A stretch of 64,000 bases of DNA from Phallusia mammillata (taxonomy: Eukaryota), in the NCBI GenBank assembly GCA_965637545.1, contig OZ281494.1, forward strand, positions 17,236,001 to 17,300,000, given 5' to 3'. Position numbers and translations under genes: made by a program. Within the stretch, counting starts at the first letter, position 1; the number at the start of each line of letters is the position of its first letter. The notes under the pieces were generated by a model. It saw nothing but the letters and a program-made list of their open reading frames with translations. It was not told the DNA's origin and ran no database searches. Of the stretch, positions 21,009 to 59,551 are shown in pieces.

Positions 21009-24000
21009 TTAGTTGCTCTTCATTCTACCCAACCTTTTCTTTAGCTTTTGAAATGCCGACGAGTGCTCTTTGTTGGGAAAGTCAATTTTATCAGAAATCA
21101 CGTGGTGGGGAATAGCAGGACGAGGAGTTTTCGTTGACTCGTAGCACTTCGGGATGGCATGAGCCACACGTGCCTTACTTAAAGCAATGTTTACTTCAGT
21201 GGTGGTGCTTGGGCGTCTTTGGTTCGGAAATATAGTGGCCACAGCATCAGCAGACGAAGTGGCAGGAGCGGTATCTTGCTTTCCATCATCGGATGAGAGA
21301 AACTCAAAATCCTCGGAACTACCAGAAAACATTGAACCCGAAGAGCTTGAACCGGGAGACGGTGGCGAACCTCTGCTTTTACGCCCGTGTTTGATTGAAT
21401 TCCATACTCTGCGATTTCGTTTCACTGAGCAGTCTTCGCTCTGGCTTCGGTTAAACAGAGGACTGCCCATTTTTTTATGAAGTGCCACCGACGCAGCAGT
21501 GGTTTCGTAGAAGGTATGTGCTGACACCTTGCGGTGCATGTTTGGGCTCATTTCCAGCGGCAAGTGTGCGAGCACGAAGAGACGTTCAAAGAGGACCTGA
21601 ACGCTGCCAAGGTCACGTGCGGACACGTCAACATGTGTGCGAAGGTGTTTGGCAATTTTTTGTTCTCCTTTGAGCCAGTCTGCTGCGGCGGAGACTGGGA
21701 CAGTTCTTTGTTCTTCCATGTCAGCTTTGTTGCCTGCGATAATAATAGGTGTATACGAGCGGGTGTGTTTTTTCTTTCGGTTTCCGTTGTGTAGAACGTC
21801 GTTGTGTAGCGAGTCTTTGGCGTCTTCGATCATACGCACCAGCTCTTTGGCGTACTCGAAACTCGACTCAGATGTTACAGAGTAAACAACAAGGAACATG
21901 TCGCCTGGAATAGAATATTCTGGGTTAAAGGCAAAAATATGTATCGATGTGTTGTTGGTTTAGCTATTTAATTTTCTTGCAATTTAAAGTTTAAAACGTT
22001 GCGTATTAACTTGCAGCGGCATGCACAAAATTATTTTTTTGAATAAGGCATCACCGAACAAACAGGATTGTATGTTGGGGCATAAATACAAAGTTTGGCG
22101 TTCAAGACCCATCCTCACTTTTACACCGCAGGCTTAATCAGATCACCACAAATCGTTGGTCTTATGATAATGCAGGAACTAAATGCTAACGTGACTAAAG
22201 GTTGCCAAAAACCCACTGACGTGGGAAATTGTCCAGATACGCGAACCGCTATTGGATTGGGTTGGGTTTTGGTTTAGGCAAAAACAAAACAAAACAACAG
22301 TGTTCCTTACACACATGCAGTGTTTTTAAGGTGTTTTGGGCGACCGAAACGGTCCCCCAAATTTCTCCAGCGGTTTCCCAAAATTTGCCAGTAGCCTAAT
22401 AAATAATTCGTTTAAGCAAATATGGCTATTTTTTGGTATTTAAATGAAACACTTGCGGTCTCTTAAAACTACTTAGCGGTCACCCAAACCAAACCTTTAA
22501 AAAAAACCTGCCCGTGACATGCGTTCGGTCACGGAGACAAAAATCCTATTTTAACCTGAAAATATTTTCGGAAAATCGAAGTGATTCATGTGGAAAGCTG
22601 GCAAAAAACATTTCTTTTGGAAATATGATCCAAACGCTATTTTCAAGGTACAATGTGACCTACAGGTGCACCAAAACAGCCTTGTTTTGCGCACAAGTGT
22701 TTTTTGACTAAAACATTAGTCTTACAAATCATTTACGTGAATCACATCTAAAGTCTGCAAATATCAAAGTACCCAATCTTTTGAAAAATTTAAGTAAACT
22801 TTATCCCACTTCGTTTGTGACGCAACAGTTCAACGAGGTGCGAACATTCACGGATGTTGTTTCGCGATGACGAAAGCTGCACGCCTGGCTGAACACGCGC
22901 GCACGTGAATAGAGTTGTTGACTCACAAAGAGGCGATTCTCTTGGCGGGGTCCGGGACCTTGGGCGTCAACAAACACAGTTTTCGATTCGTCAGAACGCA
23001 GGGGAAGGACCGAGAATGTGGTGTGCAAAGGGTGAGCGGCCTTTCAATAATAATTGAACGTGTCTGGTGACAATTGCGTTTCTCCAAAGGGATAAACATC
23101 CTTACCACTCATGAAGGATGTAGGGGATGATTGTTTACAACTTGTTAGGTCGATGAGCATCACTAATTAAGGAGGAATCGATTTGATGCCTTCTCAACAT
23201 TGAAATTCGTTTCCGATTTTTGTATGGATTTTTCCGAAGTACAACGATCAAGATTACTTTCTTACGATTAAATTAGGAAAACACTTTAAATCTATTTAAA
23301 ATCGATCATGTCAAACCACTTGAACCACACAAACCTTGTTTAAAACCAGAACCGATTTTGCCCGACTAACAGCCCTCTGGTAATTAGGTTTTTATAAAAT
23401 TCTTTCAAAAATACGTCCATGCTTAACATTAAAAAATTGCAGGTGATACCATTTTTTTTTGCAAACAGCGATCAAGTGTACTGCTAATATTTTCGAGTTT
23501 CTGATAGACTTTTCCGAGTAAAAAAACGTTCACACGGATTATTTGCCGGATCTAGAAAACCAAGCGTTGGAACTTGTTTCTGCCGAAGCGAATTTATAAG
23601 GGGGTGCAAACAGATAAATCGAGGGTAGTGAAAGAATCAATATTTGAGCTCAGCGAATTTGTTCATCGTTTCTCTGAAAGCAGTCACGCGGAATGAAGCG
23701 ACTGAGCCAAGGAGCTCCGCATAGCTCTTGTCTCCTTATTTATCAAAAGTCATTCTCCTCTCCTGGTAGCAGTTCGCTCTATGGCTGTGCGCAAACAGGT
23801 GTAAATTGTCTCACACCTATGGACTGGATATAACTAAATGTCGGATAAAGGGGTCGATAAACGTATTAATTGCCCCCCAGCTGTCCTTTTGCAGGATGTA
23901 ACAACGTGGTCGTAACATTTAAAAACATAACCTTTTTTCAAATTTGTTACGAGCAGATGGCGCGTCAACGCCCCTACAGTCGATTTTTGTCGCAATAAAA

Positions 24001-48800: not shown

Positions 48801-49346
48801 CAACATCTTAGTTAGTTTTTTTTAGTAGATTGCGTATTTTAGAGTAGCCCCTAAAAAATTTCCAAGAAATAGCTGCACACTGTAAAAACATCTAAAAATA
48901 TATGTATTCTTACTTACACAATGTACACTTTAGAATCACGCACTGGTCCAAGTGGAATTCTTCTAACCAATACTGCTGTGTTTTTTGGAATTAATGTAGA
49001 TTCATCTTTGTACACTGTAAAATATTATAATACACTGTAAAAAATATACACACAGTAGAATACACAATACCATCAACAATAGTTCAATTAGGAATTTAAA
49101 AAACAAGAAATAATAAAACAGGACTTTCAAACATTGTAATGTTACAAAAAAAACAAGTCTATATTTCATTTTATTCATACCTTGCAATGTTTGAGCATTT
49201 GTTATGTGCAGATCCAATTCAGTGCTCTTCAGTTTCTGTTTTTCCATGACAGCACGTTTCAAATCAAGAAGCGAAATTGTAATGCCATCAAAAGTAATAT
49301 TTTTGTATTCATTGCTGCTTGAAAATTTGTAATGAATCGCCGACAT
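33887..49346 (-). CDS. RBBP6: E3 ubiquitin ligase / 3'-processing factor RBBP6, about 2020 aa
   Basis: Exons 49346-49181, 49014-48918, 48411-48357, 45893-45849, 45642-45554, 45419-45275, 45141-45008, 44722-44544, 44054-43951, 43643-43186, 43101-43015, 42716-42089, 41946-41799, 41700-41646, 41364-41158, 40840-40733, 40639-40433, 40156-38081, 34961-33887; phase-consistent (6063 nt). Domains: DWNN (IHYKFSS..LIPKNTAVLVRRIP), NLAEANASEEDKIKA, zinc knuckle CYRCNQHGHYSMHC, RING (IPDELICLLC..IPCCGNSYCDDC..CPTC), Pro-rich, RS, and a Lys/His-rich tail. Confidence 0.96.
36594..36765 (+). repeat. Imperfect 40-bp direct repeat in the last RBBP6 intron
   Basis: ATAATTGTTTCTGCAAGCATAATCAAATGGGTCCCCACAC (36594-36633) versus ATAATTGTTTTTGCAAGCAAAAACGAATGGGTCCCCACAC (36726-36765). 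Confidence 0.8.
46394..46983. mobile_element. hAT (Charlie/Buster-type) MITE, 590 bp, in RBBP6 intron 3
   Basis: Perfect TIRs CAGGGGTGGGGAACCT / AGGTTCCCCACCCCTG. Perfect TSD ATTTAAAG. Subterminal GGCCCGC motifs. Confidence 0.95.
48498..48850. mobile_element. Mutator/foldback-like MITE with long TIRs, in RBBP6 intron 2
   Basis: GGG..CCC termini and imperfect inverted arms of about 100 bp (e.g. TACGCAATCTACT / AGTAGATTGCGTA; ATGTTGACGGTTAGGGCT / AGCCCTAACCGTCAACAT). Perfect 9-bp TSD CTAAAAAAT (48489-48497, 48851-48859). Confidence 0.85.
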
Positions 49347-49606: not shown

Positions 49607-52310
49607 CAACAGCGATTCTTGTTCATTATAAGAAGGAAAATTGAAAAATTGAACTTTATTTTATCTCAAAGTACTGAATGCCTTTCTTAGATTAAACAAT
49701 GCTTAATTGCTCTAACAAAAAGGCAGTTACTTTTGTCAACTTGATTGTGATCTTGATGATTTCATCAGCGATATTTGCAGCAACAATCAGTTTGTACGGA
49801 AGATGCTGTTGTGACAACTTGTGCAAAATCAGTTTAGGCAGAAGTTTTGAAGTCTGTTTGATACTGACATATGTCAAGCCAGCCGTTTTTCATTACATTT
49901 TGTCTTCGGAAAGCTTTTTACAATTTGTTCTTGACCATCAGCAGCCTCGTTTGCCAATAGAATCGAAAAACATTGAAAAGTTAATAAGGAAGTTATGCAA
50001 TGCAAATTTTATCGTTCACATTGCTGCATGTGTTGTTTTTTGGACAAAACAAACATTTAGTCTTCTGTCAGCTCTAATGGTTTGCGGCATTTAGAGAAAC
50101 TGAAAACTTTTGGTCTGAAAAACTTCCAGTGGAAAGTGTCGGGAAAATGTTTATGTTGGAATTAAACTCTAAAGTGATCAACTGCTACAGGGATGTACAA
50201 CAAAGGGTCCATGGGTCAAATTTGGATCTCTATTGGTTAAAAATGGCCCACATAAACGGCGTATACTTAAACAAAAAATGTACAAACGTGGAGCCATATG
50301 TAGCGCTTTTAAGATGCATTTCAGTTCGTTTATTGTTTCTGTAAGCTGAAAACTTTGGAAATATACGTTCAGCTGAAGAGTGCAAAAGCTTTTTTTAACC
50401 ACTATGAAAACGTAATAACTTAAATCAGTTTATAAATTATAATTCAAATAGTTCTGTTGCCTAAAAAAGCCTTTATGCCCGAATTTTGAAAACCATGCAT
50501 TAGGTTAAATTGAGGATATACGTATACGTGGAATCCTATTTTAAATAACTGAAAATGTGTAATTTAGCCTATGATTTTTTAAGTTGTGCACCTATACTAC
50601 GTATCTCAAAAATGCGCCCAAAATAGAAAATTGCTAATGTGGAATGAAAAGTGAAAAAAACGATCCAGATTTAAACCAAGGTTGGAAAACAACTGGTGTC
50701 TAAAACAACCGATGTTCCATTAACGATATTGTGATTTTAACAAAATCGATAATTTTCGGTTGAAAAATAACTGTTGTAAAACGTGAAAAAATTTCTGTGT
50801 TGTATTTGAAGTAATATTCGTCGCGTTAAGAATATATGGATTACCATTGCTCCTATTTTTTATCACCAGTTACAAATAAAACGTCATGCTTCGTGCACAA
50901 TCCTACTGACTGGAAGTATTTCTGCTTGTTTGGGGGGAAAATGGAAAAGTAAACTTTCATTTGTGACCTAAGCTTTCCTTTTTTTCTGATGTACACATTC
51001 AGCTTTTAAACAAGTTACAACTTTTTTTTCGGGGGCTGCAAAATTTGTGTCAGAAACCTATAAAGTTTGAGGGCCATTTTCTGTTAGTGTGGCAACATGT
51101 GTAGTTTATAGCGCATTTTTGTCGTACTGCATGTCTACAAATCAACTTTGAACCAAGTCACATAAACATATCCTAAATTGAATCAACAAAAACGGAATCC
51201 ATCTGCATGACTCGTCCATATCAAATGACAACATCAATCATCGTGTTGTTTAAAAAAAATCGCAACGTTGTTGCTTTTAAGACAACATACATTTTTAATC
51301 AATAATTTTAACCCCGCTTGTGCTATTTGTGTGCTGGCCACTTTTGTTTGCACGCTTAAGCGGATACGAGAGCTTTGACAAACACAGAGGCCCAGAAAAT
51401 GCACAGAGTGGACACCGGCTGACGAAACGAAAAACACTCGGCGTTTTGAAATATGACGATTGTTGTTTTGGACCTGGACCGGACAGTTAAGTGAATGGCA
51501 AAAATTCACATTGTTTGAAGAGCGGCCGTCCAATGCGACATCTCTTCGACTTGGGATCGCGACTGAGTCTGTGCGTTTTTAACGCGCTGGAGAAACTACG
51601 AGGGCCCTCGAAAGCGTACTGCCGAGCATTAACAGTGGCCCCAGGGTTGCTACTCCCACAGAATGATCCTTTTATCCGCGCACTGGCACTCTACCTTTTT
51701 GTCTAATCGCGTTTTGCTACTTTTCGATCGCCAGTGCCAGGCAACGCGCTCGAACTGCGTTCGTTTAAATCACGCTTGGCTAAAGAGCTGTGACAGGAAA
51801 GTTGTAATGGATCAATGGTCATGCACAAACCGTCGCTCAAGGCTGAAAAGGTTATTTACTAAAAGTGCAGTGGCTGCGTTTAATAGCTATGTGAGTAATT
51901 CTTTGTTTTCATCAGTGTTTGCTTGCTACGTTTGCACGAGTTTTAGGAGGTTTAAACATATCACAGCTTTAAAAGAAAAGTTTCTAGCCTAGGCTGATAT
52001 AGTTGCATGTTAACATTAAAAAGTAGAAGATTGGTTATGTCCAAAATTTATACCCAGTAACGCAAAGTTAAGGGTAGATAGGCAAGCGTTGTTGAACGTT
52101 GTTTTTTTTTCACATTTTAAGCAGCCAAGTTTTGCAATGCCAGCAGTAGGCTACGAGACGTTATTCATATTTTATGAAACCCAAACCGTGCCATGGCATT
52201 TAATCGACAACGCATAGCTTTTCTTTTTCTCTAGGGCTACTAAATAATGCATTAACCTGTGAGCATACGTTAAGCCGTCATTGTTGTTGCTACCTTCAGA
52301 GACTTACAGT

Positions 52311-53792
52311 ATGTCGAAAAACGTTTTTGGCTCGTCGCAGTCGCCCGACTTGCTGTCACCCAATTTAAGAGTGAAAGCACAAAAGCGTCGTCGTACGAGG
52401 CTTGGAACAGGTGATACTGAACTAGAGAGATCGACACAAGAGCTGTTGACTGCGTTACGGGACCCGGTTATTAACCAAGGTTCTTCTTTGAAACCACTGC
52501 CTGCAATTTTAGCGAGTGAAAAGTCACATGCAAATAGACTTTTTGAAGGAGAGGCATTGGAAGATTTCACAGGCGACTCAATGAATAAAACGAACAACGA
52601 TAATGGTCAACAACAGCGTGTTTCCAGACGAAAAAGACTGGACCAATTGGAACGATGCCCAACTTTTACCAAAGAGTCAACAACAGAAAAGCAGATTATC
52701 AAAGACGACAGTCCTGTAAAGAATGGACTACAAGAAAAACTTAACATCAGCAGACAACGCAAAAATACCGACGACGCGTCCATTTTTTCTGATATGTCGG
52801 ACGAACTTGGGTTTGAAAAACGAACCAGAGGACGCAACAGCAGAAGAAGTCTAAATAATACCAAGAATTTCAGCTCAGACATCGATGGGATTCCAAAAGC
52901 GGTTGATTCCTTTTTAAATGCTCCAGAGCAGTCTACTGGGGGCTCAAAAACTTCCCGACGCCGTTTAACACGACGGGGTCGAAACAGTCCTGCAGTAGTT
53001 TCACCAATCGAAAAGCTAACCCTGCGCGATCGGTGTTCCCCTAATGTGACTGGAAGACAACGATCACTTGCATTCGATTCCACCTTAAGTTGTGGCGAGA
53101 ACAAAATCCATGGTAAACCGACTGTGGAAATTATACCGCAAAAAAACGCCCTGACATCGAAACCGTCAAAGTTGAGTCCGCTTGCAGACAACCAAGAATT
53201 AACAAAGTCCAATCTGCATACGCACGACACAGAGTATGACTTGACTCGACTGAGAAAGCCAAGACGGAGGCAGAACCGTTTACAAAATACCGAGTCAGTT
53301 CTAGATAAGTTGACTGATCGGGCCGCTTCTGACGTCATGAGTACAGTGTCAGGTGACGCATATGACCCAACTTTTACGGGAGCCACACGACCCGATGTAA
53401 ATTCCCGATTGCTGGGAGCATTGCGGAACTCCCATTTGGAAAAAGTCAGGGGAACACAACAGCAGAATGATGAAACGAGCGGAGATGACGTAAGCGTAGA
53501 TATTTTTACGTCACCCAAGCGCCACAAAAAGCGTTCGCGGCGACGTCACGAAGGGCAAGGGGAAAATTTTGACGCGGCCAAAGAAACGCAACAAGCAAGA
53601 AACTCCTCGTCTTTGTATTCTGGTACAGTCGGTGGTGACGAGAAGACCAAAAGTGAACATGTATTTGGCAATATTGGAAACGACTTAAACGGGAAATCAT
53701 CACAAAACGCTACCCATAACGTTTCTCCACGAAGGCGGGCGTATAACAAATATCTACCGCCATTATCGGAGTCCTTAAATAATTTTAAGTAA
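52311..53792 (+). CDS. Uncharacterised 493-aa S/R/K-rich disordered protein with a WH2-like motif
   Basis: A 1.5-kb open frame in AT-rich DNA. First true ATG is at 52311, just after acceptor-like AG sites; an upstream donor gtgagt at 51891 suggests a 5' exon. No family recognised. Confidence 0.75.
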   Translation: MSKNVFGSSQSPDLLSPNLRVKAQKRRRTRLGTGDTELERSTQELLTALRDPVINQGSSLKPLPAILASEKSHANRLFEGEALEDFTGDSMNKTNNDNGQQQRVSRRKRLDQLERCPTFTKESTTEKQIIKDDSPVKNGLQEKLNISRQRKNTDDASIFSDMSDELGFEKRTRGRNSRRSLNNTKNFSSDIDGIPKAVDSFLNAPEQSTGGSKTSRRRLTRRGRNSPAVVSPIEKLTLRDRCSPNVTGRQRSLAFDSTLSCGENKIHGKPTVEIIPQKNALTSKPSKLSPLADNQELTKSNLHTHDTEYDLTRLRKPRRRQNRLQNTESVLDKLTDRAASDVMSTVSGDAYDPTFTGATRPDVNSRLLGALRNSHLEKVRGTQQQNDETSGDDVSVDIFTSPKRHKKRSRRRHEGQGENFDAAKETQQARNSSSLYSGTVGGDEKTKSEHVFGNIGNDLNGKSSQNATHNVSPRRRAYNKYLPPLSESLNNFK

Positions 53793-55117
53793 TGGATTTA
53801 TCGTTAATGTTTGCTTTTCTACCTTGTAAAGGCATCTGAAAAAGTACTGACCGCTATACAGACACATATATAGCCTAATAAAGATTGTTTTCGAGAGTTT
53901 GAGTCTGTTTTTTAAGTCAGAGTCAGTTTTAGTCAGATTGTAAGTACAATCAGTTACCCAATATAAGTTTAAATCGTGAATTTGTTATGGATCTATGCAA
54001 CGACATTTGCTCCTTGAACATGAACAACTGCAAGAACCCACTGCAGGAGTGTAGTTGTACTTAATTCAACCATTTGGAAATACAAAAATCTATACGTTTA
54101 GCACGAGAAATAAAACGTCAGTGCATAGACTTCGTAGGTCTTTTCAGAAATCTGCCACGACTTGCGCAAATAAGATACAGCGAAATATTACGCACAAGCA
54201 CTTTCGAGACGGCAGTTCAATAGAAGAAAATGCACTCGGCCTTGAGCAAATGGCCCTTGACCTTGCCAATGCGCCGTTGCGGTTGAGCTGGCGTGCGCAC
54301 ACGAAGTGATATAGGTACACTTGGGCGATATGAGCAGTTTATCGATTTTCGGTGGTCATAATTTCGATGATACTTCCCGTTGCTTGGCAACTGGGCAACA
54401 GACGAAAAATAAACTGGTGCCAAGTGTTGTGCAGTAATTTTGCGTGATGTAAACAAAGTTTAGTTGCCACTGGTCACGGTGCGATCACATTGGGAGTTCA
54501 AAGCAGTTTTGGCCTTTTTTAATGTATTGGTACAGCTAATACACCTGATTGCATTATTATCTGGTTTGTAATTTGCAAAGAATCGCTATTTGCATAAACG
54601 GTCTTTTTATTTACAAAATTCGAATTAAACTTGTTGAAGACCGAGCTAACCTTTCTACATTTGCATCAATTATGTGTTTGTCGCAAATAACATGACCTAT
54701 AAAAAAGTAGGCTATTATTTATCCTGCCCGAATCGGTACATACTCTTACATAGTTACTCCATTGTTTAAGTTAACTTCTTCCTACAAACGTTTCGTTTTT
54801 GTTTGATGTATTTTGTGGAGAGGAATAAATCGTGAGAAAAGTGAGCATAAAGAAGCGCAAAAAATAAAAATGTCACATATGCTGATACATCGTGTACATG
54901 CAAAACACTTGAATTGTGTGTGATGGCACATATGCTGAAAATACATCTTGCAAATGCTCAACAAATAAGAGTAATAAAAACTGAAATGGTCATCGATATG
55001 TCAGTCACGTGATGTGAAACACCCGTCGTTGATAAACTGGTTTGTGATGAATCACTGGCCTTCCAAGAATTCGGGACCAATGGTTTATAACTTTGGTTCT
55101 TTGCCAGTAATTTTAAC

Positions 55118-55435
55118 TCAAGAAGAATTTCGCCTTCTGTGCGTTCTTACACGATGTCGATGTCTCCTTCGCCTGGTTTGTGATTGGTCCTGTCTTTCTT
55201 TGTCTTTTTGACTTGCGTGCCTCAACATGGCTGACAAATGTTCAACTGGAATATTCAGTGACAAAGGTCGTTCATGCGTTGTGGAATTTGTCATTTCCTG
55301 TTGCAATCTTACGCTTCTTAACTTTTTAAGTAAGTGTTTCATGCTGGACGCGTCACTTTGAGCGGGTTTGCTGTTTGCTTGAATAAGTATCGACAAAAGC
55401 AGAACGAGCACCAAGTAGTGCTTGCCTAATTCCAT
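55118..55435 (-). CDS. CRH/urocortin/diuretic-hormone-like prepropeptide (105 aa as read)
   Basis: Signal peptide (HYLVLVLLLSILIQANS), KK and RSVR processing sites, then RPLSLNIPVEHLSAMLRHASQKDKERQ. This aligns without gaps to urocortin 2 IVLSLDVPIGLLQILLEQARARAAREQ (recalled sequence). Confidence 0.78.
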   Translation of the reverse strand: MELGKHYLVLVLLLSILIQANSKPAQSDASSMKHLLKKLRSVRLQQEMTNSTTHERPLSLNIPVEHLSAMLRHASQKDKERQDQSQTRRRRHRHRVRTHRRRNSS

Positions 55436-55679
55436 AAATTCAGGCTGTGTGTCCGGAATGGCTTGTTACTCAGCACGACCTACTTGTTTTCCACCAATAT
55501 TCCATTAGTTAAGATTTCCTAAGAAACTTATAAAAATCCAAAATGGTTAGGACGATTCAAACCTTACAAACTTCAATGCCCATGCTTTCTCTACTAAGTG
55601 AATCTTTCTCATCTAGCTAATGCCAGAAATGGCCAATACTTACTAACTAACGACTACACAGTAGAGATTTTGCTTCGAG

Positions 55680-55960
55680 CAAATACAACAGCTGAACTAG
55701 TTTTGGCCACCGGTGACGATTATCAGCTCCCAGACTGCCGGCATTTTACCCTTTTAGGCAACGACGGAACCAAGCCCAAGCGGCCCAGCTCAAATACTTG
55801 TGGTCATGCCCTAGAGATACGCGGAATGCCTCTTCCCATCCATCAACGACAAGACACAGACCCGGTCTGCCCTAATTGCAGTAAAACCGCCTGTGCAGGA
55901 GAAACCTATCACGCACGGTCGACCGCGGAACACCTTACCCAGAAAAAAGTTAAATCCTGA
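55680..55960 (+). mobile_element. Possible non-LTR retrotransposon 3' relic
   Basis: TCGHALE..DTDPVCPNC..ETYH resembles the TGH..DPxCxxC..ETxxH C-terminal zinc-finger region of I/R1-type ORF2. No reverse transcriptase motif seen. Confidence 0.4.
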
Positions 55961-56219
55961 AAGCCCACCATCAGCAGGTCGCCGGGCAGCCTACAATTTA
56001 CTGCCATGTAAATATATGTGCGGCTCATCATCCCTCTGTGGTTTGCGTTTGGCAAACATTCGACGCTCCGGGCAAAACATCCGGCGGATTAGCCTCATGA
56101 ATACAGGCGCCCACAATTCAGGCAGGACTGGTTCGCACACAATGCTACGATTGTCCGATGGGTAATCGGAAGATGAAAGAGTGAACAGAAAGGCTTATCC
56201 ATGGAATATCCATCTACAC

Positions 56220-56487
56220 CAGTGGTTCCAACCCGTTTCAGGTCATGGATCACCAGTTCGAATAAATGAATATTGTGGCCCAGTCCATTGTTAAGTAAGG
56301 ACAAGGAAAGCATCCACAAGCATATTGGCTTAAAACATATTCCTTCAATAAAAAATTGACATCAAACATCAATTTTAGAAGTATGGGGAAGTGATATCAA
56401 ACAACTAACAGCTAACAAACAAATAGCCTATAACTCGGACAAGGTTTTTTTCTTATTGCATTATATGCATCCATTTGAGAACCACTG
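56220..56487. mobile_element. hAT MITE, 268 bp, between the CRH-like gene and CRHBP
   Basis: TIRs CAGTGGTTC-CAA / TTGAGAACCACTG. Perfect 8-bp TSD ATCTACAC (56212-56219, 56488-56495). Confidence 0.92.
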
Positions 56488-57249
56488 ATCTACACTACAT
56501 ACCTTCAAACATTAGAATTTCTGTTGGATACCACAGAGGCAAAAAACGAGTGATGTGTTACCGTTTTTTAAAATGTGTTTGTACGTTTTTGATGATGTGT
56601 TTACCCAGTCTGTTTTGATATTGAGTAACCACACCTCGTTTCTGCACGATAACGACAAGCCCAACTTTAAACAAATCACTATTAAATGCTGGCTGAATTA
56701 ATCTTATCGAAGTGACTTTATGATCGTTAATGAAGCGCAATTCAATTGAAATTTGTGTATAAATGGCATTTTTTTATGTGATAAATCATCCTGAAACCAA
56801 AATACAACAAAAAAGAATATTACGCAAAAGGCAGGTGCTAATGTTGGTAAAAAAAAGTTACACAAAAAACGTGATTATTTTTTATCGATACATGCTTTAA
56901 AGTTGTTTGTAGTCTCAACCACTTAAACAAAGTTGGGAATGTTTGCTTTACAAAAGCATGGAATCCGGTTTTGTTTACGCTTTTTGTGCATATCCTTGAA
57001 ACGGGATCAAGGTCACTTGCAAAAAGAACTATGAGCTGATTGGTGGAAGACGTGGGCGTGAATGGGATCATAGTGGGGCGGAAAATTGCACATATTTATT
57101 GAAACGTATTTTGCAACCACCCGTCAGCCGCAAATTTCACCTGCAAACTTTTAGAATGGAGTAGTGGCATTCGAGGAGTTTCATTGGAGAGTGTACATCG
57201 TTTTATCTTCTGTTCCCACCGGTTTTATACTTACAAGTTTCGTGACAAA

Positions 57250-59551
57250 ATGATTCAAATTACAGTTTTATTTATACTCGTTTGGAAAACGGCAGTTGGA
57301 GCCGACGTAAGTAAAATGTAACTTTTAAAATTGGTTTAGACTTTTACAAGCGGAAAGTGTTGGCTTATTCGCTACGTTAACGTTACAATTGTAACCTTTG
57401 GAATGCCGTAGTTGAAGATTTTGGTTTTCTTTTAGAATGTTTTGAGTGATTCAAACTATCTTACACTGCCCGGACCATCTCTTGTAACAGTTCCTGGATT
57501 CGTAGACGTTCGTGAGTTGGGTGAGTTGTTGTCTGTTTTGTCTTATAAAACTTTAAATTCGTCTGGTGGGTCTTCAAACAGTTGTCAGAAAACTAAAATC
57601 TTATAAATTACTTGCATATTTGTTTAAATGATAATTAGGTTGCGCGTGTTCAAATGGCGTTCAGCATTGTGTTCGGTACTAACTAACTGGATGACATTGA
57701 ACACTGTTATATGCGTCTTGTTATACGCAGTTCTTAACTTACATATGATTTGAGTGATTTTGAACTTAACAAACCACGAAAAAATAACTTCATTTTCTTA
57801 ATATAACCTGTTTTTTCTCTTCTGCTGCAACTGCTTTCCTGTATAAACATTAGTTAATAAATTCTTTCTCTATTTGTCTCTGACTTTTGTTTGTCAACGG
57901 TATATGCAGAATGCATCGACATGATAAAAGTCAATTCGGATTTGAATTTTGAGCAAGAGGAAGAAGCACGCGTTCTGTGTGGTGCTTACTTTATCGGCGA
58001 TGCTGACGAACTTCTCTCGTTGGAAGTTCACGGTGTCGACATTAACTGCGACCAGGGAGAATTTGTTGAAGTAGGAGTTTGTGAAAATCTATGGATTAAT
58101 ACCTATATAAAAAAATTTCCTCATTTAATGGATGTTTGAAGAGAAAATGAATACGTTATTAGGTGTGTTGAGTGATTTCATCATTTTTGCATTGGGCACT
58201 TTTTCACTAACAATGAATTGCACTTCTAATTGTACTAACATATCCTAAAACAAATAAGTTCAAACTACAATCTGCTTGTTATTAGAAGAAACGATTTATG
58301 CTTTTTATCTGTTTTTATGAAACAGTCCAATATTATCCTGATCAGAAGCAAGAATCTTTCTTTTTTTTATACATTTTATTGTCTGCGGGAGATTCGTTTA
58401 ATAACAAAACTGTTTCAGCTGCTTGTGTCCAATTCAGATATTCGATGGATGGATGGCGCGTGACCGTTTCCTTCCTAGCGAGGAGGATCATGAGCATTCC
58501 CTAAACACCAGACTAAAAGACTATTGCAGCCACCAGAGAGCACACCAAAACGCTCCCTGGCAGTTCACATCAATGCAGAATTTTGCTCTCGTTCAGTTTC
58601 GTCTATTAGCAGGAAGCCGACTGTCTATTCGGTTTCGTAGACTTAAGTCGACAAATGGTGGGTAAATGTATTTGAAAGTTCACCAGCGCCTTACAACTTC
58701 TACTTTGTTTGACCAACAGAGTGTAATGTAGCAAATGCAGTGAAATGTTGTTTTGTTATGCAACTTAGGTGCTGTTACGTGGCTACACTATCATACACGC
58801 CAAATGTATTGTCACCAGCTGCACTGATGAGACTGTTTAGGTCCAAACACTGTGCAGTGTCTGCAGCTAACGTATAAGAGATATTACAACAATTTTTATG
58901 ACCTGTTGCAGAACAGTGCAACATATTGACACCTGACGATGAGGGAGAATATAAAATGACATCCAACGTGGAAAAGAATTGCACATTTTCGATTTTACAG
59001 GCATCGGTTCTCATCATCAAAGAAATTAAATTGTCACAAGTTGGTATAGTTAACATTAAAACACAATCAACAAAGATTTAATTAGATTTTATAATTCAAC
59101 TTTCATGCAGATTTTTGTAATATTTTTAGGATAATTTACAATCGAATAAAGGTACAGTCGAAGTTTTGAAAGGAGACTCGCTTGATCCTTCTGCCATGAC
59201 GTTGGTGCAAAAATTTGAAGCTCCAATCCACGAAAACGGTTAGATTTTTTCCAAGCTGGTTTTATTAATGTTAATGAAGTAACCACTGTTTTAGTTATGG
59301 ACAACTAGTTTTACTTTTACAACAAATCAAGCGTTAAAATGGCATTTTTATGCCGATTGAAAGCGCAAAACCGTTTCGCACATTTAAATTTACAACTAGA
59401 ATTGTTCTTTGCAGCTGAAAGGAAATTGATACTTGACAAAGTTCACGCCGCAGTGCGTATGACGTCACCAGGTCACAGTGGCAACTTCATTCGCTTCGCC
59501 TATTCAAGGTTGGCTGACGAAGAAGCTCTGAAGGCCGAACTTTGCACGTGA
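57250..59551 (+). CDS. CRHBP: Corticotropin-releasing hormone-binding protein, 298 aa
   Basis: Exons 57250-57306, 57436-57520, 57910-58070, 58438-58657, 58912-59039, 59130-59238, 59415-59551; phase-consistent (897 nt). Signal peptide; ECIDM..LCGAYFI..INCDQGEFVEIFDGW..FLPSEEDH..DYC..QNFALVQFR..QCNI..NCTFSI..VEVLKGDSLDPSAM..VRMTSPG, colinear with vertebrate CRHBP. The exon 5 donor is the least certain junction. Confidence 0.93.
58817..58868 (+). ncRNA. Hammerhead motif of the same family as 30137-30188, with G12-to-C core change, in CRHBP intron 4
   Basis: AGCUGCA CUGAUGA GACU-GUUUA-GGUC CAAA CACUG-UG-CAGUG UC UGCAGCU. Confidence 0.85.

What the first reader, a model, noticed from the sequence alone, without database searches (positions are those of the whole stretch)
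55085..55200. Stop codon where the conserved Leu of the CRH amide tail should be
Seen: past the TGA (55120-55118) the frame continues V-K-I-T-G-K-E-P-K-L-stop, so N-S-S-*-V-K-I-T-G-K aligns with CRH N-R-K-L-M-E-I-I-G-K. One base change (TTA to TGA) would explain it. Before it lies a ~17-aa Arg/His insert (TRRRRHRHRVRTHRRR). Established: the amidated C-terminus is needed for CRH-receptor binding, whereas CRH-BP contacts more N-terminal and central residues. Inference: a null allele, a sequencing error, stop readthrough, or a truncated ligand that still binds the neighbouring BP or has a cationic, antimicrobial-like role.
Basis: partly seen in the sequence, partly recalled or inferred. Interest (0 to 1): 0.7.

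Follow-up and report, generated by a model that had tools for sequence, protein, structure and literature searches.

The report
Native stop of sea-squirt CRH-like gene
The stop codon is real, appears in what are probably transcripts and is shared with a distant sea-squirt relative, so it is the normal end of a small secreted CRH-like peptide gene that has no amidated tail, not a mutation of a conserved leucine.

Summary
The letters are as described: a 105-codon ORF on the minus strand (55435-55118) ends in TGA, and the frame then reads VKITGKEPKL-TAA. The interpretation mostly fails.

- **Not an error or splice.** Two probable RNA contigs from two samples, and a DNA run, run colinear through the TGA and the GTAAGA "donor".
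- **Shared stop.** The only relative found, L001 from another sea squirt (39% identical), has the same start (MEL.K), the same RRRRHR-led Arg/His tail and a TGA in the same alignment column.
- **No conserved tail.** Past its stop L001 reads HLLIATNFRDR, with no IxGK.
- **Not an insert.** The Arg/His run is a conserved feature.
- **Weak CRH likeness.** It covers only the N-terminal 25 residues. In that register CRH's last six residues fall on RRRRHR, not on the stop.
- **Neighbour.** The head-to-head CRH-binding-protein gene is real and the pairing is conserved.

Best reading: a divergent CRH-like precursor that natively lacks an amidation signal, probably cut at RRRR. What it binds is unknown. 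The scan noted this locus only on this window.

The parts
55118..55435 (-). CRH-like precursor ORF: 105 codons plus TGA, on a single exon
   Evidence: Searches give the ORF. It aligns end to end with the L001 ORF at 39% identity. Identity by codon position is 0.42/0.68/0.41.
54927..55527 (-). Stretch covered by a probable RNA contig with no gap and no difference: at least 92 nt of 5' UTR, the CDS, and at least 191 nt of 3' UTR
   Evidence: X1 record 2 covers 54927-55527, and X2 record 3 covers 54987-55252. The runs are only guessed to be RNA, but in X1 only exon-like patches of the 5.9 kb are covered.
55370..55435 (-). Predicted signal peptide MELGKHYLVLVLLLSILIQANS
   Evidence: Read by eye, with the cleavage site inferred. 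AF2 models a helix over residues 2-21. L001 has a matching hydrophobic N-terminus.
55316..55327 (-). Conserved basic site KKLR followed by S (L001: RKPR followed by S), a candidate proprotein-convertase cut
   Evidence: The alignment is. Cleavage itself is inferred.
55205..55279 (-). CRH-like core THERPLSLNIPVEHLSAMLRHASQK, aligned with human CRF residues 1-25
   Evidence: The hhalign score is 19.5, against 8.0 +/- 1.9 in 400 column shuffles, none of which reaches it. Pfam CRF does not hit.
55163..55174 (-). Invariant RRRR, a probable furin/convertase site that would end the peptide as a free acid after trimming
   Evidence: RRRRHR is invariant in both species. Cleavage is inferred.
55121..55174 (-). 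Arg/His-rich C-terminal tail RRRRHRHRVRTHRRRNSS (10 R and 3 H in 18 residues)
   Evidence: It is conserved in kind in L001: RRRRHRRLRHDRFRTPP, with 9 R and 2 H in 17. It is not a tandem repeat.
55118..55120 (-). TGA stop, the native end of the ORF
   Evidence: It is present in X1, X2 and X5. It aligns with the TGA of L001 at 2556-2558.
55085..55117 (-). Post-stop in-frame stretch VKITGKEPKL-TAA, read as 3' UTR
   Evidence: L001 reads HLLIATNFRDR-TAA here, and DNA identity falls to background after the stop. The motif's chance rate is 0.7%.
55145..55150 (-). GTAAGA, not used as a splice donor in the contigs laid
   Evidence: Contigs are colinear across it. L001 has CGTTTGAGA here, with no GT.
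55735..55831 (-). Conserved non-coding element 300-400 bp upstream of the CRH-like ATG, a candidate cis-regulatory element of the gene pair
   Evidence: It is 76.5% identical over 98 nt to L001 1741-1830. It is unique in the window and has no Rfam hit.
57250..57306 (+). CRH-binding-protein gene, exon 1 (signal peptide), head-to-head with the CRH-like gene
   Evidence: It is 63% identical to L001 713-657 on the opposite strand, with a GT donor at the same place.
57861..58662 (+). CRH-binding-protein exons carrying the N-terminal domain
   Evidence: Pfam CRF-BP_N scores E 1.2e-10 and 8e-10.

Best explanation
The TGA at 55120-55118 is the ordinary, evolutionarily conserved stop of a small single-exon gene for a secreted peptide precursor in a sea squirt.

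The precursor has four parts. The first is a signal peptide. The second is a short spacer with a conserved basic site. The third is a core of about 30 residues whose first 25 resemble the N-terminal and central part of CRH/urocortins (PLSLNIPVEHLSAML...A). The fourth is an invariant RRRRHR that opens an Arg/His-rich tail of 17-18 residues, which runs to the stop.

There is no Gly-basic amidation signal in either species. The product is therefore a CRH-like peptide without the amidated C-terminal receptor-binding segment.

Inferred processing:
- The signal peptide is removed.
- Convertases cut at RRRR. Upstream they cut at KKLR/RSVR in this species and at RKR in L001.
- Carboxypeptidase trims the remaining basic residues.
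- The result is a free-acid helical peptide of about 30-44 residues plus a polycationic tail peptide.

The downstream 'ITGK' is 3' UTR and resembles a CRH tail by chance.

The gene sits head-to-head with the CRH-binding-protein gene in both species. This suggests shared regulation and possibly that the binding protein is a partner. Both points are inferred, not shown.
For: - **Sequence.** Searches confirm the letters.
- **Transcripts.** Two probable RNA contigs run colinear through the stop and the putative donor, and a DNA run agrees. X1 also covers the neighbouring ORF but none of the spacer between the two genes.
- **Orthologue.** There was one hit in 1.84 billion representatives, P0001 (E 8e-4), from the contig L001.
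- **Shared end.** Under the standard code L001 encodes a 108-aa ORF that ends in TGA. It aligns end to end at 39% identity, with M1 E2 L3 K5, EHLS, ML, KD.ER and RRRRHR invariant and the stops in the same column.
- **Coding signature.** The second codon position is the most conserved (0.68, against 0.42 and 0.41).
- **CRH likeness.** Profile-profile alignment places residues 53-77 on CRF 1-25, with a score above all 400 shuffles. The human peptides used were verified against PDB chains.
- **Fold.** AF2 predicts one long helix over residues 64-103, with pLDDT 78-94.
- **Neighbour.** CRF-BP_N domains are confirmed next door, and CRHBP exon 1 is conserved head-to-head in L001.
- **Gene structure.** CRH-family genes, including Ciona's, carry the whole precursor on one exon (PMC7406891).
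Against: - CRH-family membership is weak. Pfam CRF gives nothing even at E 10.
- A small HMM built from four human peptides ranks the ORF only 27th of 1660 ORFs. Its N-half model ranks it 53rd, and L001 292nd.
- hhalign probability is only 11-23%.
- Only one orthologue could be found, so 'conserved' rests on two species.
- The runs are only guessed to be RNA, and contigs cannot exclude rare spliced or read-through forms.
- Cleavage sites and the mature peptides are inferred. In this species the residue after R56 is Pro, so the N-terminus of the peptide is unclear.
- The CRF residues I recall as important for binding-protein contact (ARAE, 22-25; from memory, not checked here) are ASQK/ANKK here.
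Confidence: 0.62

Rival explanations
1. The stop is native and conserved, but the gene is not CRH-derived. It is a lineage-specific small secreted, polybasic protein that happens to lie beside CRHBP, and the PLSLNIP motif is convergent or chance.
For: There is no Pfam CRF hit. The ranks in my HMM tests are not significant. The PDB phmmer search is blank. Atlas neighbours are generic small secreted precursors at scores of 0.84 or less. The C-terminal half shows no CRH-like features.
Against: The hhalign alignment is in register and beats 400 of 400 shuffles. The precursor layout, the single exon and the long C-terminal helix fit the family (PMC7406891). The conserved pairing with the CRH-binding-protein gene in two divergent species is hard to credit as coincidence.
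Confidence: 0.28
2. Programmed readthrough or recoding of the TGA in this species yields ...NSS-X-VKITGKEPKL, and the ITGK is processed to an amidated end.
For: The frame stays open for 10 codons and holds I-T-G-K. This motif is found after only 0.7% of stops in the window. L001 also has 11 open codons after its TGA.
Against: The post-stop peptide is not conserved. 55% of post-stop frames stay open for 10 codons anyway. There is no SECIS or other RNA family hit. The contexts TGA-G and TGA-C-A are not, as far as I recall, the known readthrough context. GK is followed by EPKL, so amidation would need an unusual monobasic cut.
Confidence: 0.04
3. A recent nonsense mutation, null allele or assembly error in a once canonical CRH gene.
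For: This rests only on the by-eye alignment NSS*VKITGK against NRKLMEIIGK.
Against: The TGA stands in three runs from two studies. The orthologue's TGA lies in the same column. The ORF keeps a coding signature to its end. The Arg/His 'insert' that this alignment needs is conserved.
Confidence: 0.02
4. An alternative transcript spliced at CGT/GTAAGA (55150) joins a downstream exon that supplies a canonical tail in some tissue.
For: GTAAG is a fair donor core, and contigs cannot show that a rare isoform is absent.
Against: No joint appears in any run. The donor is not conserved. Scanning 53800-55117 in three frames finds only chance-level hydrophobic-x-G-K/R motifs, none behind a convincing acceptor. 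The neighbouring convergent gene begins about 1.3 kb away.
Confidence: 0.04

Closest known systems
Vertebrate CRH / urocortin 1-3 precursors (Pfam CRF, PF00473)
   Same: It has a signal peptide and a single coding exon, and the peptide sits at the C-terminal end of a precursor of about 100 aa. The N-terminal motif xLSL(D/N)(V/I)P...L...L...A is in register with CRF 1-25 and close to the LSLDVP of urocortin 2/3. A long helix is predicted.
   Different: There is no Gly-Lys/Arg amidation signal. The last six or so positions are replaced by RRRRHR and a polybasic tail. Pfam's model does not score it. It lies beside CRHBP; from memory, not checked here, the human CRH and CRHBP genes lie on different chromosomes.
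Ciona CRH/diuretic-hormone-like peptide gene (Lovejoy and Barsyte-Lovejoy 2010; Mirabeau and Joly 2013, as cited in PMC7406891 and PMC7481443)
   Same: It is a tunicate gene, described as a single CRH-like gene with the whole precursor on one exon (PMC7406891).
   Different: I could not obtain the Ciona peptide sequence. Orthology therefore remains open, as does whether Ciona's peptide has an amide signal or lies next to CRHBP.
CRF(6-33), the synthetic CRF-BP ligand inhibitor
   Same: In the hhalign register the conserved core spans roughly CRF positions 6-35. That is the part which, as CRF(6-33), binds CRF-BP with CRF-like affinity but not the receptors (PMC11004997).
   Different: CRF(6-33) is a laboratory fragment. 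Here the resemblance is positional only, and the ARAE-equivalent residues are not conserved.
Insect diuretic hormone 44
   Same: From memory, its N-terminus (PSLSIVNPLDVLR) resembles PLSLNIPVEHLS. I did not check this with a tool.
   Different: DH44 is amidated and is recognised by Pfam CRF.

Membership tests
CRH/CRF peptide family (Pfam PF00473) | Scores against the curated family profile | tested here: not met
   hmmscan found no CRF hit for the whole ORF at E<=1. It found none for the peptide parts or for the L001 ORF at E<=10.
CRH/CRF peptide family (Pfam PF00473) | N-terminal and central helix motif (xSLDxxxxLLRxxLxxA) in register | tested here: inconclusive
   hhalign places residues 53-77 on CRF 1-25 with a score of 19.5. 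This exceeds all 400 column shuffles (mean 8.0, sd 1.9), but the probability is only 11-23%. HMM ranks are 27th and 53rd of 1660.
CRH/CRF peptide family (Pfam PF00473) | C-terminal Gly plus basic residue(s) that give an amidated end | tested here: not met
   The ORFs end ...RRRNSS* and ...RFRTPP*. Neither holds a G-K/R.
CRH/CRF peptide family (Pfam PF00473) | Signal peptide, with the peptide at the C-terminal end of a short precursor encoded on one exon | tested here: met
   The transcript contigs are colinear. The family rule is taken from PMC7406891.
CRH/CRF peptide family (Pfam PF00473) | Activates a CRH-type class B receptor, or is bound by CRHBP | not testable with these tools
   This needs peptide synthesis and binding or cAMP assays. 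Ciona has two CRF-receptor homologues (PMC1764030).
CRH-binding protein (the neighbouring gene) | CRF-BP N-terminal domain | tested here: met
   Pfam CRF-BP_N scores E 1.2e-10 and 8e-10, above the curated cut-off. CRF-BP_C is weak at E 0.009.
Selenoprotein or programmed-readthrough gene | A SECIS element or a conserved post-stop coding sequence | tested here: not met
   There is no Rfam hit at E<=5 in 53800-57300. The post-stop frames are unrelated in the two species.

The most novel reading that the evidence does not exclude
Sea squirts carry a natural, receptor-silent CRH derivative. It would be a free-acid peptide equivalent to CRF(6-35), made from a gene that shares a divergent promoter region with the CRH-binding protein. 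It would act on or through the binding protein (occupying, chaperoning or releasing it) rather than through the receptor's extracellular domain. The conserved poly-Arg/His tail would serve as a second, cationic product or as a retention signal.
Probability: 0.1. Interest if true: 0.8.

Novelty: new variant of a known kind. Interest (0 to 1): 0.4.

Why it matters
The flagged "stop in place of a conserved Leu" is not a lesion, so the finding as stated loses its point.

What remains is of moderate interest for neuropeptide evolution. It is a tunicate CRH-like gene that has done without the amidated C-terminus for a long time. That end is what vertebrate CRH needs to bind its receptor. The gene carries a conserved polybasic tail instead and is kept head-to-head with the CRH-binding-protein gene.

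If the peptide proves to bind the binding protein but not the receptors, it would be a natural counterpart of the pharmacological tool CRF(6-33). It would also make the ancestral role of the binding protein testable.

Tried and rejected
- **Pfam.** Nothing on the ORF or the peptide pieces.
- **PDB phmmer** with the C-terminal 60 residues: blank.
- **ESM Atlas.** Only generic small secreted precursors at 0.84 or less.
- **The search for homologous proteins.** Blank for the ORF. The two-species profile returned only P0001. The nearest CRHBP exon was blank. No third species was found, and all three searches are used.
- **Exact look-up of the ORF.** Not on record.
- **Ciona peptide.** Its sequence was not obtainable. 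The 2010 and 2013 papers are not held, and the supplements of PMC7406891 hold only neighbour-gene tables.
- **Metagenome scans** with the conserved non-coding core: blank twice.
- **Rejected readings.**
  - Selenocysteine or SECIS.
  - Tandem-repeat expansion as the origin of the Arg/His run.
  - A downstream tail exon.
  - A +2-frame SRILGRP at about 55070, which is at chance level and would need a frameshift that the contigs do not show.
  - A structured RNA in the conserved upstream element, which shows no covariation.

Full report
**Observation.** The minus strand holds an ATG at 55435 and a 105-codon ORF that ends in TGA at 55120-55118. It has a hydrophobic N-terminus, a stretch ERPLSLNIPVEHLSAMLRHASQKDKERQDQSQT, and then RRRRHRHRVRTHRRRNSS. 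The same frame goes on VKITGKEPKL and ends in TAA (55117-55085). GTAAGA lies at 55150-55145.

**Is the stop real, and is the transcript spliced?** I laid four public runs on 52000-57900, which is 5901 letters and within the operators' limit.
- Run X1 gives a 601-nt contig that lies on 54927-55527 with no difference and no gap.
- Run X2, another sample of the same study, gives a contig on 54987-55252.
- Both run straight through the TGA and through the GTAAGA.
- A DNA run (X5, possibly the assembly's own source) agrees. No joint was reported in any run.
- X4 comes from a different study and covers 55162-55358 only. It carries a synonymous change (L39) and H54Q.

The runs are only guessed to be RNA. 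In X1, however, just two patches of the 5.9 kb are covered: this ORF with its flanks and the neighbouring 503-codon ORF (52299-53804). This is the pattern of transcripts, not of genomic DNA. Contigs cannot exclude a rare isoform.

**Orthologue.** A word-based search found nothing for the ORF. An exhaustive phmmer search of 1.84 billion representatives gave one hit, P0001 (E 8e-4). It comes from a 2743-nt contig of a public run, here L001.

That database protein had been called with TGA read as Trp. Under the standard code the L001 ORF runs from ATG 2232 to TGA 2556-2558 and has 108 codons.

The two ORFs align from first to last residue at 39% identity. Invariant positions are M1 E2 L3 K5, EHLS, ML, A74, KD.ER and RRRRHR. 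The stops fall in the same column, which also holds in the DNA alignment. Identity by codon position is 0.42, 0.68 and 0.41, a coding signature.

After the stop, DNA identity drops to background. L001 there reads HLLIATNFRDR-TAA, with no IxGK. The GT of GTAAGA is absent in L001 (CGTTTGAGA).

That is what is seen, though in only one orthologue.

**Chance of ITGK.** Among all 6792 stops in the six frames of the window, 0.7% are followed within ten codons by hydrophobic-x-G-K/R and 3.5% by G-K/R. In 55% the frame stays open for ten codons. The motif is uncommon but was picked after the fact. It is not conserved, and it is followed by EPKL, not by the end of the precursor. No SECIS or any other Rfam family lies in 53800-57300.

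**Is it CRH-like at all?** The evidence is mixed.
- *Against:*
  - Pfam's CRF model does not score the ORF or its parts, in either species, even at E 10.
  - PDB phmmer is blank.
  - The Atlas offers only generic secreted precursors.
- *Own HMM test.* I verified human CRF, urocortin 1, urocortin 3 and residues 2-38 of urocortin 2 against PDB chains and built a small HMM from them. The ORF ranks 27th of 1660 window ORFs, which is not significant.
- *For.* Profile-profile alignment of the two-species alignment against the four human peptides puts residues 53-77 (THERPLSLNIPVEHLSAMLRHASQK) on CRF 1-25. The score is 19.5, against 8.0 +/- 1.9 for 400 column shuffles, none of which reaches it. The LSLNIP stretch is close to the LSLDVP of urocortin 2/3.
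- *Layout.* AlphaFold2 predicts one helix over residues 64-103 with pLDDT 78-94. The precursor layout and the single coding exon match the family rule, which PMC7406891 reports for Ciona too.

In this register CRF residues 36-41 (KLMEII) fall on RRRRHR (88-93). The place where the amide tail "should be" is therefore occupied by the conserved polybasic run. The stop lies 12 residues further on.

**Neighbour.** Pfam confirms CRF-BP N-terminal domain exons at 57861-58136 and 58405-58662 on the plus strand. Exon 1 of that gene (57250-57306, MIQITVLFILVWKTAVGAD, GT donor) is 63% identical to a stretch on the opposite strand of L001, with the donor at the same place.

The head-to-head pair is thus conserved. 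ATG-to-ATG distances are 1815 bp here and 1519 bp in L001. A 98-nt non-coding element 300-400 bp upstream of the CRH-like ATG is 76.5% identical between the species, more than the coding sequence.

**How it most likely works.**
- *Shown:* a gene that is conserved, probably transcribed and under coding constraint, with a native TGA; a signal-peptide-like N-terminus; an invariant RRRRHR; and no amidation signal.
- *Inferred:*
  - Convertases cut at RRRR, and upstream at KKLR/RSVR here or RKR in L001.
  - Trimming leaves a free-acid helical peptide of about 30-44 residues and a polycationic tail peptide.
- *From the literature.* CRF(6-33) binds CRF-BP with CRF-like affinity but not the receptors (PMC11004997). 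Ciona has two CRF-receptor homologues (PMC1764030).
- *Speculation.* Because the conserved core covers about CRF 6-35 and the gene is tied to CRHBP, the binding protein may be its partner. Against this, the positions matching CRF 22-25 (ARAE) are ASQK/ANKK.

**Known or new.** I did not test that independently, beyond finding the CRHBP pairing in a second contig of unnamed origin. Another note records the head-to-head pair on this same window (s1-380840), which I confirm.

A Ciona CRH/DH-like gene has been known since 2010, but I could not obtain its sequence. I therefore cannot say whether this tail-less form is already described.

**Limits.** There is one orthologue only. The RNA status of the runs is a guess. 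No peptide-level data exist.

**Verdict.** The stop is the gene's native end, and the Arg/His run is a conserved feature. What is left is a divergent, non-amidated CRH-like gene paired with CRHBP. This is moderately interesting, and it is best taken forward with more tunicate genomes and with peptide and binding experiments.

Noticed in passing
window 55735-55831 (L001 1741-1830): A non-coding element is 76.5% identical over 98 nt between the two species, with an identical 19-nt core, which is more conserved than the adjacent coding sequence. It is unique in the window, has no Rfam hit and shows no covariation. It lies between the CRH-like gene and CRHBP and may be a shared regulatory element.
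   Followed up: partly
window about 56264-56357: This short stretch has a summed contig word-depth of about 3000 (3027) in DNA run X5, against 119 around it. Many partial contigs end here, so it is a high-copy repeat inside the spacer between the two genes.
   Followed up: no
window 52281-53792 (+): A 503-codon ORF with no Pfam family lies on a probable RNA contig (X1, 52299-53804). It is the convergent neighbour of the CRH-like gene.
   Followed up: no
L001 2133-2594 (protein P0001): The protein collection's gene call starts upstream at GTG and reads the TGA as Trp, which adds 12 residues of 3' UTR. Such calls can hide a shared stop when the protein is used as it stands.
   Followed up: yes
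window 55274 and 55321: A contig of run X4 (another study, depth 4.7) differs at two places. One gives H54Q, just before the CRH-like core, and one is synonymous (L39). They may be polymorphisms or errors.
   Followed up: partly
window 49002-49346 (-) and 21009-21899 (-): There is a DWNN-domain exon (RBBP6-like, E 8.8e-17) and a Ras-family last exon (E 4.2e-9). These are ordinary neighbours.
   Followed up: no
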